From Mytilus californianus (Eukaryota): 64,000 nt of DNA. Shown in pieces: positions 52,376-61,500 of the stretch. Within the stretch, counting starts at the first letter, position 1. Every line of letters begins with the position of its first letter. The position numbers and the translations under genes are program-made. The DNA is taken from NCBI RefSeq assembly GCF_021869535.1, contig NW_026262668.1:16244001-16308000 (forward strand), read 5' to 3'. Under the pieces are notes generated by a model that was not told the origin of the DNA, ran no database searches, and saw nothing but the letters and a program-made list of their open reading frames with translations.

Positions 52376-54945
52376 TACACTTATAATATAATATTATTTA
52401 ATAATCAATGTTTAAATGTCACCAATATGTGCTAATATTAAAATTTCAAGTGTTATTCGGTCATTACAAGTGTTATTTGGTCATTCGTGTTACAATGTAC
52501 CCGCCTTTCAAGACGTCATAATTATTTGGACTACACCTTCCTCATATTTAAAATTATTTGGACTAGCTCCTTAAGACGTCATGATTAAATTGACTGCAGA
52601 ATGTCAGAACTCATTCCCTCGATCTACGTAAAATTTAAAATCTTACGCTTAGTAATTTTAAATTGTTTCACCTGTGAATGTATGTTGTTTTGCTCCCAAA
52701 AACCCGGAAATCTAATGTAGATTATATAATTAGGAAATCACATGAAAGGGGAGCGGAATTACGGTAGACTCTACGTATCACTAGCCTAGGGTAGTATGAA
52801 TATTTATGAGTTTTATGAAGCAACGCGGGATACGAGATCACGTCATTGGCGCGATTATCTAATTTCACAGAACTATCAGCAAGCGGAAAACAAAAATATG
52901 TTCAGAAGTTCTTAGATATTTCCCAAGATGTAGGGCATATATCACTGGAACAGAGACGATACCAAAATAAGATTTTTGAATACTGAATCAGCTTTAGATA
53001 TTGTGCACAAACACGGCATCTAGGCACTCAAAAGACGATTATTAAAAGGGGGGAGTTACACGCAACGAATGCATACGAGGGCTACCCTATGTGTTACATA
53101 TGAAAACATACAGAAGAGCTATATTAAACCAGCGACAGTAACAGATCCAAATTTTCATAAGGAAAGGGGGGGGGGGAGTGGGGCTGCTCCAGTCAATGGC
53201 ATAGGGACTTCAGTCTTGACTACGGGTCAAATATATGTAATACATTATAGCGTGTCAATCGTCTACATGCATTTAAAAAAACGTATGCCCCTACTGTAGA
53301 CGATTTATTGGCTATATATCTGATCTGTAGTCCAGTCCCTATATATGCTCCAGTCATGCCTGGGTGATTCCCTATATATCCACCAATTTTCCCTACAAGA
53401 GGGGGGTCCAATGCACCCTGCTCACCTCCTAAATCAGTGTTTGAGAGACACATATTCACTTGTATATATGTCTCAGAATAAACCAATGTAAAACCAAACC
53501 TTAGCCTAACTCAATTACTGATTAGACCAATAATTATGATGTCTTGAAAGGCTATTTTATTTTTTTTGGTCATAATTATCTGGACTACTGCTATGATCCC
53601 ATCATTAACATATGGTCGAAGAAGGTGGGGCTAGGGTGTTTGTTTCATCTTGCACACAGTTACAGGGTTTGGTACAGACATCTGGCTGTTGTTGTAAACC
53701 AGACACCCAATTCATATACATTTATTGTACATGTATTTTTGTTTGCAAGAATCTGTACATATATACCCGTTGTTCATATAAATTTCAGAAGAAAATCATT
53801 ACCCATTGATCCATAAATATATATTTTCCAAGCTATCATAAATATAAACTATGACATCTTTAGATGTAACTAAAAACCTGGGTTCTTTCATATTATTGAA
53901 CAAAAACATCAGTACACAATTTTACAGACATCTAAGATTATCATAACATTTAAACATGCTATCTGGTTATTAACTTTAACTGATTTTATAAATTTTTTGT
54001 AGTAATCCTTGCATTCTGTTTATTTTTAAAGGAATGCATTGACCATACAAAGGAATATATGTTTGTTTGCCCTTACCCTACCTACATGTACTCAAAACAT
54101 AGCTGCCTACCCAAATTCTTTTATTGTTCTGATGTGAAAAAGTTTTCTTTTAATCTGATAGGCATGAAGACTAAAACACATCTGACACTTCAATTTCCCT
54201 TTGCTGTGAGAAAAAAGAAGATGCCTACCAACCTACCCACTGTCTCTAAAATGTACTTTTGGGTAGGGTAAGGGCTAACTGAAATATTTATAAGTGTAGC
54301 CTTACAAATGTGACATCAAAATTTATCAGTGTAAAAATTATTTCAGGTTTAAATAGTCTTCTTGAAAACTTGGACATAATGACGTAAAAATCTGCTAAGA
54401 GGTGTGCAAATTGAGCAGGGGATGCCCCACAAACCTTTTCTGTTAGTTAACATTTACAGTGTCCAGTTATGTACCCCTTTAAGTTTATTCTGTCCTTTTA
54501 AATTTGTGAATAAAGGAAGTATCTTTATTAATAATTTATATATATATATGCTCTTATTATGTTCAAAACAACCTGATTACTTTTTGTTTAGTTCTAAGTA
54601 AAAACTAGGAGTAAGGGAATTTTCTGCTAAGGGAATTTAGACATTTTTTTAAAAATTTCAACCTAAGATCAAATATATAAATTTCACTTGTCCACTTAAT
54701 CATGTTAATATGAAAAACTAAAGTGCAAGGAGTATTTATTTATCTACATTTCTTGTTTCAGCAATTGCTGTACCTTTCCAGTTACTTATTATGTGTTGTG
54801 TATTAATTTGACTATAACACTTTTGAGTGACTGGATAGGTTGATAATATTCATCAATTGAAAAAGAAACTGGAGAGATTGGTAATAGTTTTAGACAGCGG
54901 CAATTGAAGGTACACAAATTTAGGTTGTCATATCAGCCTACAAAG

Positions 54946-56160
54946 TCATATCAATAGCCCAGGCTAGTGGTCAATAAGCATGAGTCATCAGACATCAGTC
55001 ATATCAATGGCCTAGGGTAGTGGTCAGTTATCAGGAGTGATCAGTCAACAGTCCTATCAATAGCCTAGGGTAGTGGTCAGTTATCTGGAATGACCAGTTT
55101 ACAAAGTTTACAAACTCATATCACTAGCCTAGGGTAGTGGTCATTTATCTTGAATAACCAAGTAACAAATTCATATCACTAGCCTAGGGTAGTGGTCAAT
55201 TATCTTGAATGACCAGTTAACAAAGCCATATTACTAGCCTAGGGTAGTGTTCAATTATCAGGAGTGATCAGTTTACAAAGTCATATCACTAGCCTAGGGT
55301 AGTGGTCAATTATCTGGAATGACCAGTTAACAAAGTCATATCACTAGCCTAGGGTAGTGGTCAGATATCTGGAATGACCAGTTAACAAAGTCATACCACT
55401 AGCCTAGCATAATAGTCAATTATCTGGAATGACCAGCTAACAAAGTCATATCACTAGCCTAGGGTAGTGGTCAATTATCTGGAATGACCAGTTAACAAAG
55501 TCATATCACTAGCCTAGGGTAATGGTCAATTATCTGGAATGACCAGTTAACAAAGTCATATCACTAGCCTAGGGTAGTGGTCAATTATCTGGAATGACCA
55601 GTTAACAAAGTCATATCACTATCCTAGGGTAGTGGTCAATTATCTGGGATCACCAGTTAACAAAGTCATATCACGAGCCTAGGGTAGTGGTCAATTATCT
55701 TGAATGACCAGTTAACAAAGTCATATCACTAGCCTAGGGTAGTGGTCAATTATCTTGAATGACCAGTTAACGAAGCCATGTCACTAGCCTAGGGTAGTGG
55801 TCAATTATCTGGAATCACCAGTTAACAAAGTCATATCACGAGTCTAGGGTAGTGGTCAATTATCTGGAATCACCAGTTAACAAAGTCATATCACGAGCCT
55901 AGGGTAGTGGTCAATTATCCGGAATGACCAGTTAACAAAGTCATATCACTAGCCTAGGGTAGTGGTCAATTATCTTGAATGACCAGTTAACGAAGGCATG
56001 TCACTAGCCTAGGGTAGTGGTCAATTATCAGGAGTGATCAGTTTACAAAGTCATATCACTAGCCTAGGGTAGTGGTCAATTATCTGGAATGACCAGTTAA
56101 CAAAGTCATATCACTAGCCTAGGGTAGTGGTCAGATATCTGGAATGACCAGTTAACAAAG
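54946..56160 (+). repeat. 55-bp satellite (about 22 units), left foldback arm
   Basis: Unit gtcatatcactagcctagggtagtggtcaattatctggaatgaccagttaacaaa; period 55445 to 55500. Confidence 0.95.
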
Positions 56161-57225
56161 AGAGTTAATGAGACATTACTGACAACCACCCTAGGCTAGT
56201 GATATCACCCATATATGACAACCACCTTAAGTTAGTGATACGAGACATTAATGACAACTACACTAGGCTAGTGATATGAGACATTAACGACAACTACCAT
56301 AGGCTAGTGATATGAGACATTAATGACAACTACCTTAGGAGATGAAATGATACGTTACTGACAACTACAAAAAGCTAGTGATATGACACATAACTGACAA
56401 CTACCCTAGGATGGTGATATCACATAATTATAATTGACAACTACTCAAGGGTAGTGATATGACACATAACTGAAAAGTACTCTAGGCTAGTCAGTGATAT
56501 GAAATAAGTGACAAATTCACTAGGCTAGTGATATAACACACTACTGACAACTACCGTAAGCTAGTGATGACAAAATACTGATAACTACCCTACTGTCCCT
56601 AGGCTAGTGATATAACTTTGTTGTTTTATAATGACAAGTAACGGACAACTACCAGGATAATGATTATATGACACACTACTGACAACTACTCGAGTAGTGA
56701 TATGACAAATTACTGACAACTCCCCTAGGCTAGTTATATGACACATTACTGACAACTACCTTAGGCTAGTGATATATCTGTTGTTTTATAATGACTCATA
56801 ACTAAAAACTACCCTGAGCTAGTGACATTACACATAACTGACAACTACCCTAGGCTAGTGATATAACTTTGTTGTTTTATGACACATAGCTGACAACTAT
56901 CGTAGGTTAGTGATATGACACATAACTGACAACTACCATATGCTAGTGATATAAAACATAACTGAAAACTATTCAAGGCTAGTGATATGACACATAACTG
57001 ACAACTACCATAGGCTAGTGATATGACACATAACTGACAACTATTCAAGGCTAGTGATATGACACATAAATGACAACTACCATAGGCTAGTGATATGACA
57101 CATAACTGATAACTATTCAAGGCTAGTGATATGACACATAAATGACAACTACCCTAGGCTAGTGATCTTACACATAATTGGTAACTACCATAGGCTATTG
57201 TTATGACATTGTTGAATGATCCGAT
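56161..57225 (-). repeat. 36-bp satellite forming the unpaired centre of the foldback
   Basis: Unit gacacataactgacaactaccataggctagtgatat; shares the core with the 55-mer in right-arm orientation; gives the 12-aa repeat ORF 56845-57120. Confidence 0.9.
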
Positions 57226-58515
57226 ACTACCCTATACTAGTGATATGGCTTTGTAAACTGGTCATTCCAGATAATTGACTACTACCCTAGGCTAGTGATA
57301 TGATTTTGTTAACTGGTTATTCCAGATAATTGACCACTACCCTAGGCTAGTGATATGACTTTGTTAACTGGTCATTCAAGATAATTGACCACTACCCTAG
57401 GCTAGTGATATGGCTTTGTTAACTGGTCATTCCAGATAATTGACTATTACCCTAGGCTAGTGATATGGCTTTGTTAACTGGACATTCCAGATAGTTGACC
57501 ACTACCCTAGGCTAGTGATATGACTTTGTTAACTGGTCATTCCAGATAATTGACTATTACCCTAGGCTGGTGATATGTCTCTGTTAACTGATCACTCCTA
57601 AAAAAATTGACCACTACCCTAGGCTAGTGATATGACTTTGTTAACTGGTCATTCCAGATAATTGACCACTACCCTAGGCTAGTGATATGACTTTGTAAAC
57701 TGATCAGTCCTGATAATTGACCACTACCCTAGGCTAGTGATATGAATTTGTTAACTGGTCATTTAAATAATTGACCACTACCCTAGGCTAGTGATATGGC
57801 TTTGTTAACTGGTCATTCCAGATATAATTGACTATTACCCTAGGCTGGTGATATGTCTCCGTTAACTGATCACTCCTAAAAATTGATCACTACCCTAGGC
57901 TAGTGATATGTCTCTGTTAACTGATCACTCCTAATAATTGACCACTACCCTAGGCTAGTGATATGTCTCTGTTAACTGATCACTCCTGATAATTAACCAC
58001 TACTCTAGGTTAGTGATATGGATTTGTTAACTTAACTGATCTGATAAATGACCACTACCCTATACTAGTGGTATGGCTTTGTTAACTGGTCATTCAAGAT
58101 AATTGACTACTACCCTAGGCTAGTGATGTGACTTTGTTAACTGATCACTCCTGATAATTAACCACTACTCTAGGCTAGTGATATAGATTTGTTAACCTAA
58201 CTGATCTGATAAATGACCACTACCCTATACTAGTGGTATGGCTTTGTTAACTGGTCATTCAAGATAATTGACTACTACCCTAGGCTAGTGATATGACTTT
58301 GTTAACTGGTCATTCCAGATAATTGACTACTACCCTAGGCTAGTGATTTGGCTTTGTTAACTGGTCATTCCAGATAACTGACCACTACCCTAGGCTATTG
58401 ATAGGACTGTTGACTGATCACTCCTGATAATTGACCACTACCCTAGGCCATTGATATGACTGATGTCTGATGACTCATACTTATTGACAACTAGCCTGGG
58501 CTATTGATATGACTT
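57226..58515 (-). repeat. 55-bp satellite (about 23 units), right foldback arm
   Basis: Reverse complement of the left-arm unit. Confidence 0.95.
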
Positions 58516-61500
58516 TGTAGGCTGATATGACAACCTAAATTTGTGTACCTTCAATTGCAGCTGTCTAAAACTATGACCAATCTCTCCAGTTTCTTTTTCG
58601 ATTGATGAATATTATCAACCTATCCAGTCACTCAAAAGTGTTATAGTCAAATTAATACACAACACATAATAAGTAACTGGAAAGGTACAGCAATTGCTGA
58701 AACAAGAAATGTAGATAAATAAATACTCCTTGCACTTTAGTTTTTCATATTAACATGATTAAGTGGACAAGTGAAATTTATATATTTGATCTTAGGTTGA
58801 AATTTTAAAAAAAATGTCTAAATTCCCTTACTCCTAGTTTTTACTTAGAACTAAACAAAAAGTAATCAGGTTGTTTTGAACATAATAAGAGCATATATAT
58901 ATATAAATTATTAATAAAGATACTTCCTTTATTCACAAATTTAAAAAGGACAGAATAAACTTAAAGGGGTACATAACTGGACACTGTAAATGTTAACTAA
59001 CAGAAAGGGTTTGTGGGGCATCACCTGCTCAATTTGCACACCTCTTTGCAGATTTTTACGTCATTATGTCCAAGTTTTCAAGAAGACTTATTAAACCTGA
59101 AATAATTTTTACACTGATAAATTTTGATGTCACATTTGTAAGGCTACACTTATATTTTAGTTAGCCCTTACCCTACCCAAAAGTACATTTTAGAGACAGT
59201 GTGTAGGTTGTAAGGCTTTTTCTTTTTTCTCACAGCAAAGGGAAATTGAAGTGTCAGATGTTTTTCAGTCTTCATGCCTATCAGATTAAAAGAAAACTGT
59301 TTCACATCAGAACAATAAAAGAATTTGGGTAGGCAGCTATGTTTTGAGTACATGTAGGTAGGGTTAGGGCAAACAAACATATATTCTTTTGTATGGTCAA
59401 TGCATTCCTTTAAAAATAAACAGAATGCAAGGATTACTACAAAAAATTTATAAAATCAGTTAAAGTTAATAACCAGATAGCATGTTTAAATGTTATGATA
59501 ATCTTAGATGTCTGTAAAATTGTGTACTGATGTTTTTGTTCAATAATATGAAAGAACCCAGGTTTTTAGTTACATCTAAAGATGTCATAGTTTATATTTA
59601 TGATAGCTTGGAAAATATATATTTATGGATCAATGGGTAATGATTTTCTTCTGAAATTTATATGAACAACGGGTATATATATGTACAGATTCTTGCAAAC
59701 AAAAATACATGTACAATAAATGTATATGATTGGGGTGTCTGGTTTACAACAACAGCCAGATGTCTGTACCAAACCCTGTAACTGTGTGCAAGATGAAACA
59801 AACACCCTAGCCCCACCCCCTTCGACCATATGTTAATGATGGGATCATAGGTAGCAGTAGTCCAGATAATTATGACAAAAAAAAAAAAAAAATAGCATTT
59901 CAAGACATCATAATTATTGGTCTAATCAGTAATTGAGTTAGGCTAAGGTTTGGTTTTACATTGGTTTATTCTGAGACATATATACAAGTGAATATGTGTC
60001 TCTCAAACACTGATTTAGGGGGTGGGCAGGGTGCATTGGACCCCCCTCTTGTAGGGAAAATTGGTGGATATATAGGGCATCACCCAGGCATGACTGGAGC
60101 ATATATAGGGACTGGACTACAGATCAGATATATAGCCAATAAATCGTCTACAGTAGGGGCATACGTTTTTTTAAATGCATGTAGACGATTGACACGCTAT
60201 AATGTATTACATATATTTGACCCGTAGTCAAGACTGAAGTCCCTATGCCATTGACTGGAGCAGCCCCACTCCCCCCCCTTCCTTATGAAAATTTGGATCT
60301 GTTACTGTCGCTGGTTTAATATAGCTCTTCTGTATGTTTTCATATGTAACACATAGGGTAGCCCTCGTATGCATTCGTTGCGTGTAACTCCCCCCTTTTA
60401 ATAATCGTCTTTTGAGTGCCTAGATGCCGTGTTTGTGCACAATATCTAAAGCTGATTCAGTATTCAAAAAACTTATTTTGGTATCGTCTCTGTTCCAGTG
60501 ATATATGCCCTACATCTTGGGAAATATCTAAGAACTTCTGAACATATTTTTGTTTTCCGCTTGCTGATAGTTCTGTGAAATTAGATAATCGCGCCAATGA
60601 CGTGATCCCGTATCCCGCGTTGCTTCATAAAACTCATGAATATTCATACTACCCTAGGCTAGTGATACGTAGAGTCTACCCGGAATTACGCAGTGTCGTC
60701 TAATTTTGGAAATATCTACGTTCAGGGCTGCCTAAATTAAAGAAGTCATTTTTCTGATCGTAATACATGATACTTCCCAATGACCTTTATTTGTAGGGAT
60801 TCGGTCTACAGGGGGATCTGATGAGGCACATTTGTACTTGGATTTATAATGCATTGGTGCAGGAACATATATATGACTGGAGCGGGCCCCCTCTTAAGCA
60901 GTCAGACTGAGAGGGCCCCCTCTTATGAAAATTTCTGGGTCCGACACTGGCAAAAGGTAGTTAAAGCATTTTGTAGTCTGGGGAAAAAAAGTATTTAAAA
61001 GAAAAGGTAGTTAACACATTTATTAGTAACCAACACTTTCAACTTTAGCTTCAAAGAATTAATTAATTTCATCAGAGACATATATACACGTGTATATATG
61101 TCTCTGATTTCATTATTTGAATAAATTATGATTTTTTAAAATGAATATAATATCAAAAGTTGTAACACAGATATTCCAAATCTTTTTACAAAAATCCGCA
61201 TGTGTTTATCTTTTGAAAGAAAAAAGTTAAATATGTATATCCAAAGATAGAAATGTCCAAGAAACCAAAATTTTAGGTAGACCGTATATGTCTAAAATTT
61301 CGACCCCATTTATCTCTAAATTTAGCACACGAAAGGTATATTTTTTATTACACATTTGAATTGACCAAGTGAAAAATAGCTTGTATGCAAATTTTTCGTA
61401 AAAAAATCACAGTGGGATCAAAACTGTTTCGTATGCCCTTAATGTCAATTAAGTGTACTTTTCGGTGCTTTGATTCTATGAATTTGTAGTGTAACTCAAA

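What the first reader, a model, noticed from the sequence alone, without database searches (positions are those of the whole stretch)
52776..58515. The foldback's subterminal 20-mer is the seed of its internal satellites
Seen: TATCACTAGCCTAGGGTAGT lies once, 14 bp inside each terminus (52776-52795 and its mirror). It then reappears more than 2 kb inward as the core of the 55-bp arrays (about 22 + 23 units) and, in variant form, of the central 36-bp array, with orientation flipping at 56160. The 55-mer also contains an inverted hexamer pair TGGTCA-N11-TGACCA. Inference: the motif is the transposase binding site, multimerised roughly 70-fold deep inside the element. It could act as a transposase sponge or enhancer of mobilisation, and shows a satellite being born from a transposon end.
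Basis: partly seen in the sequence, partly recalled or inferred. Interest (0 to 1): 0.7.

Follow-up and report, generated by a model that had tools for sequence, protein, structure and literature searches.

The report
Mussel foldback transposon with end-motif arrays
This is a 7.9-kb non-coding "foldback" jumping gene of the California mussel; a 20-letter motif next to each tip is repeated dozens to hundreds of times deeper inside, a layout already known from fly, mosquito and beetle transposons, so it is a tidy new example, not a new kind of thing.

Summary
The element spans window 52763-60680 and has a perfect 9-bp target-site duplication. The 20-mer TATCACTAGCCTAGGGTAGT lies 13 bp (not 14) inside each tip. 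It is also the core of the 55-bp arrays (about 22 and 23.5 units) and of a central 36-bp array. There are 68 copies with up to 3 mismatches, against 0 expected.

The genome holds about 25-30 copies or fragments and 43-47 termini, 38 of them with the exact 20-mer. Ten of 13 elements examined have perfect 9-bp duplications. None encodes a protein. Motif copies per element range from 2 to 342. Three copies whose arms are 99.8-99.9% identical carry 171, 206 and 266.

The core is the best conserved part of the unit, but rare variants are not depleted in it. Every array locus I could check adjoins arm sequence, so I found no free-standing satellite. No cognate transposase was found.

The "binding site multiplied inward" reading is plausible and has direct precedents in Muta1, Galileo, Tetris and Rehavkus. 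It is untested here. Nothing supports the "sponge" idea. The TGGTCA-N11-TGACCA pair is unremarkable.

The scan has already reported another satellite-armed foldback family, with a 178-bp repeat, elsewhere in this genome. Verdict: new member of a known kind.

The parts
52754..52762 (.). left copy of the 9-bp target-site duplication CGGAATTAC
   Evidence: identical to 60681-60689
52763..52775 (+). terminal 13-bp motif, an imperfect palindrome (GTAGA-C-TCTAC, 10 of 11 self-complementary)
   Evidence: present at 39 termini genome-wide
52776..52795 (+). subterminal 20-mer, left end
   Evidence: 0 mismatches
52796..54939 (+). left non-repetitive arm; non-coding, and includes pieces of other high-copy repeats (about 53330-53412, 53496-53578, 54077-54242)
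54940..56160 (+). left 55-bp array, about 22 units; the outermost 3 are degenerate 53-bp units; shows a 165-bp higher-order period
56161..56167 (.). point where motif orientation flips
56168..57208 (-). central 36-bp arrays (72- and 88-bp higher-order units), motif in minus orientation; the 36-mer matches the first 36 nt of the 55-mer at 32 of 36 positions
57226..58518 (-). right 55-bp array, 23.5 units
58519..60647 (-). right arm, 98-99% complementary to the left arm
60648..60667 (-). subterminal 20-mer, right end
60668..60680 (-). terminal 13-bp motif, right end
60681..60689 (.). right copy of the 9-bp target-site duplication

Best explanation
Window 52763-60680 is one copy of a young, non-autonomous foldback-type cut-and-paste DNA transposon family of the mussel.

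Layout of each end:
- a 13-bp near-palindromic terminal motif;
- one copy of the 20-mer directly behind it;
- about 2.2 kb of non-coding arm;
- arrays of 55-bp and 36-bp units whose shared core is the same 20-mer.

Proposed mechanism (inferred): a transposase supplied in trans, probably of the Mutator/MULE-Foldback type because the duplication is 9 bp, recognises the terminal motif plus the 20-mer. The internal arrays are extra copies of that recognition site, made by unequal exchange or replication slippage. They are tolerated, or mildly favoured, because they recruit more transposase.

What is shown: the element's structure, its mobility signatures, the family-wide conservation of the motif, and the very fast turnover of array length.

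What is inferred: that a transposase binds the 20-mer, that the arrays help mobilisation, and the superfamily.
For: Mobility and family:
- Perfect 9-bp duplications flank 10 of 13 elements examined.
- There are 41 termini matching the 33-mer with up to 3 mismatches, and 39 by the 15-mer.
- Copies E6, E7 and E8 have arms 99.8-99.9% identical. Left and right arms within one copy differ by about 1.5%, so a master copy was propagated by transposition.
- There are no ORFs of note. Longer copies are longer only because their arrays are longer.

The motif:
- 38 termini carry the exact 20-mer, and the exact 20-mer in terminus context occurs nowhere else in 1.65 Gb.
- In 1568 units chosen without bias toward any position, core variability is 4.0% against 10.8% outside it (Mann-Whitney P=0.001). 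The 20-nt windows starting at unit positions 13-15 are the best conserved of all 55; the motif starts at position 15.
- The 36-mer and the 55-mer share the core.

Array turnover: motif copies per element run from 2 to 342.

Independent data: arms are present in short-read contigs of three coded organisms.

Precedents:
- In Muta1, a terminal palindromic motif plus one subterminal repeat at each end suffices for transposition, and more repeats raise transposase binding and excision (PMC5499845).
- The Galileo THAP domain binds a subterminal site and its copies in the tandem repeats of the TIR (PMC3688188).
- The Tetris end domain and its internal 220-bp repeats share a 37-bp stretch (PMC4079207).
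Against: - No autonomous copy and no linked transposase were found. All termini belong to non-coding elements. At least 150 MULE-domain hits exist, but none lies beside a terminus.
- Rare variants (under 2% frequency) are as frequent in the core as outside it: 23.0 against 23.3 per position, P=0.55. Per-unit purifying selection is therefore not detectable. The core's lower variability comes from eight high-frequency subtype variants that all lie outside it.
- A 3,054-bp copy with no arrays and a 530-bp copy with one truncated 20-mer still carry perfect duplications. This could mean the arrays are dispensable, or it could reflect deletion after insertion.
- In this family the extra copies sit more than 2 kb from the tip. 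In Muta1 the repeats directly abut the terminal motif.
Confidence: 0.6

Rival explanations
1. Neutral hitch-hiker. The arrays descend from a chance internal duplication of the end region, or the end motif is a relic outer unit of an array-built inverted repeat. They expand and contract as ordinary selfish tandem DNA. The motif inside the arrays has no role in transposition, and only the tip-proximal copy matters.
For: - Rare variants are not depleted in the core.
- Array length varies 5-fold among near-identical copies, as expected for unconstrained tandem DNA.
- Array-less and mini derivatives keep perfect duplications.
- In 36-bp units the second half of the motif is already quite variable, at 12-39%.
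Against: - None of the 8 high-frequency unit variants falls within the 20 core positions, while 8 of 35 outer positions carry one.
- Both repeat types retain the core consensus exactly.
- Array-bearing copies make up nearly the whole family, whereas each array-less form is a single copy.
- In Muta1, extra repeats measurably raise excision.
Confidence: 0.3
2. Transposase sponge. The internal arrays titrate transposase away from productive ends and so damp mobilisation of this or competing elements.
For: Only the sheer number of candidate sites, up to 342 per element and about 3,000 per genome if half of all units are exact. The Tetris authors speculate that very large arrays may disrupt transposition.
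Against: The youngest and most successful lineage (E5-E9, arms above 99% identical) carries long arrays of 96-272 motifs and perfect duplications. Long arrays have therefore not stopped recent transposition. No direct evidence exists.
Confidence: 0.07
3. Assembly artefact: a palindromic chimaera of long reads, not a real element.
For: Large palindromes and tandem arrays are prone to misassembly, and exact unit counts may be wrong.
Against: - More than 20 copies lie at different loci, each with its own perfect 9-bp duplication.
- Arms and the arm-to-array junction appear in independent short-read contigs of three organisms.
Confidence: 0.02

Closest known systems
Muta1 (Aedes aegypti MULE, a 'type 2 foldback'; PMC5499845)
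   Same: It has 8-9-bp duplications. The extreme tip is a short imperfect palindrome, directly followed by a repeated subterminal motif. Experiments showed that the tip plus one repeat per end suffices, and that more repeats increase transposase binding and excision.
   Different: Muta1 has 9 copies of a 12-bp repeat packed into a 145-bp TIR and encodes its own transposase. Here, one copy sits at the tip and the other 60-340 lie more than 2 kb inward, inside 55- and 36-bp units. No transposase is known.
Tetris (Drosophila virilis foldback element; PMC4079207)
   Same: It is non-autonomous and no partner transposase has been found. Duplications are 8-10 bp. The terminal domain and the internal tandem repeats share a short stretch, read by the authors as the repeats arising from the end and adding binding sites. 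Repeat number varies.
   Different: In Tetris the shared stretch is 37 bp at about 80% identity, the units are 220 bp, and kb-size free satellite arrays exist outside the element. Here the match is 20 of 20, the units are 55 and 36 bp, and no free-standing array was found.
Galileo (Drosophila, P superfamily; PMC3688188)
   Same: It has long, internally repetitive TIRs. A subterminal site bound by the transposase recurs in the TIR tandem repeats and is bound there too.
   Different: Galileo uses a THAP/P-type transposase and has only 2-3 sites. By my recollection (not checked here) its duplication is 7 bp, which would differ from the 9 bp seen here.
Rehavkus elements of Tribolium (bioRxiv 10.1101/2024.12.02.626372; PMC6446971)
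   Same: They have 9-bp duplications and long inverted termini with a variable number (2 to about 50) of subterminal satellite repeats that evolve in concert. In one case the repeats escaped to form an 80-kb array.
   Different: Rehavkus is defined by a PHD-finger transposase and is reported from arthropods and annelids only. No transposase is available here to test membership.
Tm1 (Meloidogyne Mutator/Foldback family; PMC3169594)
   Same: It has 9-bp duplications and TIRs built of variable numbers of a short tandem motif. Most copies are non-coding.
   Different: Tm1 has 14-bp units directly at the ends and asymmetric 7-bp tips, and one copy encodes a Phantom-type transposase.
The 178-bp satellite-armed foldback family of the same mussel genome (scan notes s1-337777, s1-287930)
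   Same: It is in the same genome and has the same general architecture of hairpin arms carrying tandem arrays.
   Different: It has a different repeat (178 bp) and is presumably a different family. I did not compare sequences.

Membership tests
Foldback-like elements (structural class) | Long inverted arms make up most or all of the element | tested here: met
   Arms plus arrays account for the whole 7,918 bp, and the arms are 98-99% complementary
Foldback-like elements (structural class) | Inverted arms are internally repetitive, with tandem-repeat number varying between copies | tested here: met
   55- and 36-bp arrays; 2 to 342 motif copies per element
Foldback-like elements (structural class) | Target-site duplication shows transposition | tested here: met
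   Perfect 9-bp duplications in 10 of 13 elements examined
Mutator/MULE (including Foldback/Phantom) superfamily | 8-10-bp (typically 9-bp) target-site duplication | tested here: met
   Always 9 bp; criterion as used in PMC4079207 and PMC3169594
Mutator/MULE (including Foldback/Phantom) superfamily | A MULE DDE transposase is encoded by, or demonstrably linked to, the family | tested here: inconclusive
   No coding copy. At least 150 PF10551 hits in the genome, none adjacent to any terminus.
Mutator/MULE (including Foldback/Phantom) superfamily | Terminal palindromic motif followed by a subterminal repeat, as in Muta1 | tested here: met
   GTAGA-C-TCTAC is 10 of 11 self-complementary and is directly followed by the 20-mer. 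This is a structural resemblance only, not sequence homology.
   The duplication is 9 bp in every case. The motif does not fit the TxxGGG THAP core, by my own reading of the sequence.
Rehavkus | 9-bp duplication plus subterminal minisatellites | tested here: met
   family features from PMC6446971
Rehavkus | PHD-finger transposase | not testable with these tools
   No autonomous copy was identified
Satellite DNA in the strict sense (free-standing arrays) | Arrays exist outside the transposon | tested here: not met
   Every array locus lacking a nearby terminus (C99:47.13 Mb, C99:52.67 Mb, C99:23.03 Mb, C88:21.90 Mb) has inner-arm sequence directly beside it. Only 1447 exact motif copies exist genome-wide, 821 of them in the 12 joined elements. 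Only 38 of 67 candidate regions were scored, so this is not exhaustive.

The most novel reading that the evidence does not exclude
The arrays may be a functional, fast-evolving 'dose dial' for transposase recruitment. Palindromic non-coding elements of 20 kb or more, made 70-80% of binding-site arrays, would then remain mobile. Their array length would change by kilobases on the timescale of about 0.1% point divergence and would set each copy's mobilisation rate up or down. If so, this would be a natural system in which the birth of a satellite from a transposase-binding site can be followed copy by copy.
Probability: 0.15. Interest if true: 0.55.

Novelty: new member of a known kind. Interest (0 to 1): 0.3.

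Why it matters
It adds a mollusc example to the foldback/MULE-type elements whose end motif is multiplied inside the arms. The match between the end motif and the array core is unusually clean at 20 of 20. The copy-number range is also unusually large, from 2 to 342 per element.

Several copies are 99.8-99.9% identical in their arms yet differ by thousands of base pairs of array. The family could therefore serve to measure how fast transposon-borne tandem repeats turn over, and to test whether repeat dose affects mobilisation. That effect has been measured only for Muta1.

It changes no principle. The idea that such repeats are extra transposase-binding sites is already published and partly proven.

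Tried and rejected
- **Coding capacity.** ORFs of the arm, of the extra 979-bp and 2,389-bp inserts in copy E5, and of the middle of the 3-kb copy show nothing protein-like. I therefore ran no protein searches.
- **Autonomous partner.** I searched the terminal 410 bp, the 33-mer with up to 3 mismatches, the variant 30-mer, the terminus-context 22-mer and the 15-mer tip. All hits are non-coding family members or lone ends. The MULE domain search gave at least 150 hits, none near a terminus.
- **Co-variation test.** The variant end motif (…CACGGGCC…) occurs only at two lone termini and has no arrays of its own, so the test was uninformative.
- **Free-standing satellite.** Not found.
- **Inverted hexamer pair as a structural element.** Rejected.
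- **Literature.** No paper holds a 16-nt core of the motif, CACTAGCCTAGGGTAG, and none describes a Mytilus foldback family.
- **Expression.** One RNA run gave almost no reads on the arm outside the embedded high-copy repeats. Only about 6% of that run was read, so this is weak.
- **Limits.** I could not read the 38-kb copy at C154:19.00-19.04 Mb, the variant termini, or the intact MULE ORFs.
Full report
**1. What is in the sequence**

The 20-mer TATCACTAGCCTAGGGTAGT occurs exactly at 52776-52795 (+) and 60648-60667 (-). With up to 3 mismatches it occurs 68 times in the window, all between 52776 and 60667. None is expected in 100 dinucleotide-preserving shuffles.

Tandem Repeats Finder reports three blocks:
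- a 55-bp array at 55105-56160 (19.2 copies, 91% matches). Three degenerate outer units extend it to 54940, and it shows a 165-bp higher-order period.
- 36-bp arrays at 56168-57208.
- a second 55-bp array at 57226-58518 (23.5 copies).

Plus-strand motif hits stop at 56128 and minus-strand hits start at 56185.

The outer arms, 52763 to about 54940 and 58519 to 60680, are 98-99% complementary. The element is bounded by a perfect 9-bp direct repeat, CGGAATTAC, at 52754-52762 and 60681-60689. That fixes the tip at 52763, so the motif starts 13 bp inside the tip, not 14.

The 13 terminal bases are themselves a near-palindrome: GTAGA-C-TCTAC is 10 of 11 self-complementary. The inner 16 nt of the 20-mer are 14 of 16 self-complementary around CCTAGG.

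**2. The family**

The window is G000:C88:16244001-16308000 of a 1.65-Gb, 175-contig assembly. I did not verify the species.

The 33-nt end (tip plus motif) occurs 41 times with up to 3 mismatches. The 15-nt tip occurs 39 times, against 4 for the backwards-read control. Together these give about 43-47 termini and roughly 25-30 elements and fragments.

I joined eleven copies from fetched loci, added the 3-kb copy, and found a 530-bp mini-copy. Ten of these 13 elements, this one included, have perfect and different 9-bp duplications.

All share the same plan: tip, 20-mer, about 2.2-kb arm, 55-bp units, 36-bp units, then the mirror image.

Elements range from 530 bp through 3.05, 5.6, 7.6, 7.9, 8.2, 8.4, 11.7, 11.9, 14.2, 15.3 and 19.4 kb to 22.9 and 24 kb. 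One pair of termini lies 38 kb apart, but I could not read it. Longer copies contain nothing new except more array, one nested insertion in copy E5, and a roughly 172-bp insert near the centre.

No ORF of substance exists in the arm or the inserts. All copies seen are therefore non-autonomous.

**3. Age and array dynamics**

The left arms of E6, E7 and E8 are 99.8-99.9% identical to each other, and so are their right arms. Left and right arms of one element differ by about 1.5%. A master copy with two slightly different arms was therefore copied faithfully to new sites very recently.

Yet these three copies carry 266, 171 and 206 motif copies. Across the family the count runs from 2 to 342, and arrays make up 0-80% of an element. 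Array length thus changes by kilobases while the arms gain about 0.1% substitutions.

One caveat applies: unit counts in arrays of 10-20 kb depend on assembly quality.

**4. Is the 20-mer special within the unit?**

I collected 1568 units of 55 bp using a whole-unit Hamming criterion, which favours no position. Non-consensus frequency averages 4.0% over the 20 core positions and 10.8% over the other 35 (Mann-Whitney P=0.001). Among 519 distinct units the figures are 5.3% and 13.2%.

Of all 55 circular 20-nt windows, those starting at positions 13, 14 and 15 are the best conserved. The motif starts at position 15. The exact 20-mer is present in 50% of units.

The 36-bp consensus equals the first 36 nt of the 55-mer, in a phase beginning GTCA before the motif, at 32 of 36 positions. 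The 36-mer therefore matches the 55-mer with 19 nt left out, and both keep the core consensus exactly.

Against strong constraint, variants rarer than 2% are equally common inside and outside the core (23.0 against 23.3 per position, P=0.55). The difference comes from eight old, high-frequency subtype variants that all lie outside the core. This pattern fits weak, redundant selection on many sites. It is also compatible with history alone.

**5.

*Shorter relatives.*
- The 3,054-bp copy has no arrays and keeps the 20-mer at both ends. Its duplication is TTGAAATCG.
- The 530-bp copy keeps the 20-mer at one end and only its first 8 nt at the other. Its duplication is ATGTTTTAC.
- Each form is a single copy, so deletion after insertion is as likely as transposition in that form.

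*Conservation at termini.* 38 termini carry the exact 20-mer. In terminus-like context (G before, A after) the exact motif occurs 41 times in the genome, all inside this family: 38 at termini and 3 within its arrays.

*Free-standing arrays.* Array hits that lie far from any terminus are at C99:47.13 Mb, C99:52.67 Mb, C99:23.03 Mb and C88:21.90 Mb. Each has inner-arm sequence 1-2 kb to one side, so they are truncated elements. The whole genome holds 1447 exact motif copies, and 821 of them are in the 12 joined elements. So I saw no escaped satellite, although only 38 of 67 candidate regions were scored.

*Autonomous relative.* None was found. At least 150 MULE-domain hits exist, some in open frames of 1,000-1,700 codons, but none lies near a terminus. 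A variant end motif (…CACGGGCC…) occurs only at two lone termini, with no matching arrays.

**6. Independent data**

Contigs of public runs from three coded organisms hold the arm at about 96-99% identity. The unique left flank is present only in organism A. The family is therefore real and shared by related taxa. The organism names were coded and I did not identify them.

One contig of run X1 matches the left flank up to 52763 and then runs on for 223 letters unlike the element. This is what an empty site would look like, because the base after the duplication is G in both states. I could not read those letters, so it remains a lead.

An RNA run gave almost no reads on the arm apart from embedded high-copy repeats.

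**7. Mechanism**

*Shown:* a mobile, non-coding, palindromic element family with a conserved tip and a subterminal motif whose copies fill the inner arms.

*Inferred:* the tip plus the 20-mer is what the transposase recognises, and the arrays add recognition sites.

The inference rests on three published systems:
- **Muta1, a mosquito MULE with 8-9-bp duplications.** Its 10-bp palindromic tip plus one 12-bp subterminal repeat per end is sufficient for excision, and more repeats raise transposase binding and excision frequency.
- **Galileo.** Its THAP domain footprints a site 63-80 bp from the end and also binds copies of that site in the first two tandem repeats of the TIR.
- **Tetris.** Its end domain and 220-bp internal repeats share 37 bp. 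The authors read this as the repeats originating from the end and as added binding sites. They also suggest that very large arrays may finally block transposition.

Rehavkus elements of flour beetles likewise carry 2 to about 50 satellite units in their inverted termini. In one case these expanded to an 80-kb free array.

The 9-bp duplication points to the Mutator/Foldback group and not to the P group. Without a transposase, superfamily membership stays open.

**8. What differs here**

- The extra copies start more than 2 kb from the tip instead of abutting it.
- They are embedded in two related unit types.
- They reach about 170 per arm.
- The end-to-array match is a perfect 20 of 20.

A sponge role has no support. 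The youngest lineage has long arrays and intact duplications. The direction of descent, end motif to arrays or the reverse, cannot be read from these data.

**9. Verdict**

I rate it a new member of a known kind, of moderate to low interest.

The same stretch was also noted by the scan as a foldback element (s1-342877). Another satellite-armed foldback family in this genome was already followed up (s1-337777).

Noticed in passing
L019:2946-3118 (G000:C132, about 21792232-21792404); also once to three times near the centre of copies E2-E9: An insert of about 172 bp interrupts one 20-mer (TATCA | insert | AGGGTAGT) and has been amplified along with the array units. Its translation ends in a '...RTRWRNIVSGLCS...' tail that, from memory, resembles the C-terminus of non-LTR retrotransposon ORF2. 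It is absent from the window's copy.
   Followed up: partly
G000:C88:89063866-89064395 (in L007): A 530-bp mini-derivative of the family with a perfect 9-bp duplication, ATGTTTTAC. One end keeps only the tip plus the first 8 nt of the 20-mer, and G-runs sit at the deletion junction.
   Followed up: yes
L019:2050 (arm position equal to window 53299); run X8 joint 53299->52776: A 'short-arm' structural variant in which the 55-bp array starts directly after arm position 53299, about 540 bp from the tip. It is seen in one mussel copy and, at roughly half the arm depth, in contigs of coded organism B. It is therefore a shared subfamily, not a one-off deletion.
   Followed up: partly
window 52503-52582, 53330-53412, 53496-53578, 54077-54242: Short segments with read depth 20-100 times that of the rest of the arm. 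These are pieces of other very high-copy repeats. Joints link 53566 back to 52503, as for the two ends of an abundant MITE.
   Followed up: no
window 52561-52763 (run X1, record 1): A 460-nt contig at single-copy depth matches the left flank up to exactly 52763 and then continues for 223 letters unlike the element. It may be the empty (uninserted) allele in another individual.
   Followed up: no
G000:C24:20825783, C110:85150539, C110:95284299, C1:67633091, C1:140665286: MULE-domain hits with the same score and envelope lie in open frames of 1,019-1,715 codons. This looks like a multi-copy, possibly active MULE family. No exact 20-mer lies near the C1:67.6 Mb copy.
   Followed up: partly
G000:C165:81964813-81993428: Two plus-strand termini, one minus-strand terminus and an extra inverted inner arm lie together. 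The left flank of copy E8 is arm sequence of a neighbouring copy, and E8 has no matching duplication. This points to a nested or rearranged pair of elements.
   Followed up: no
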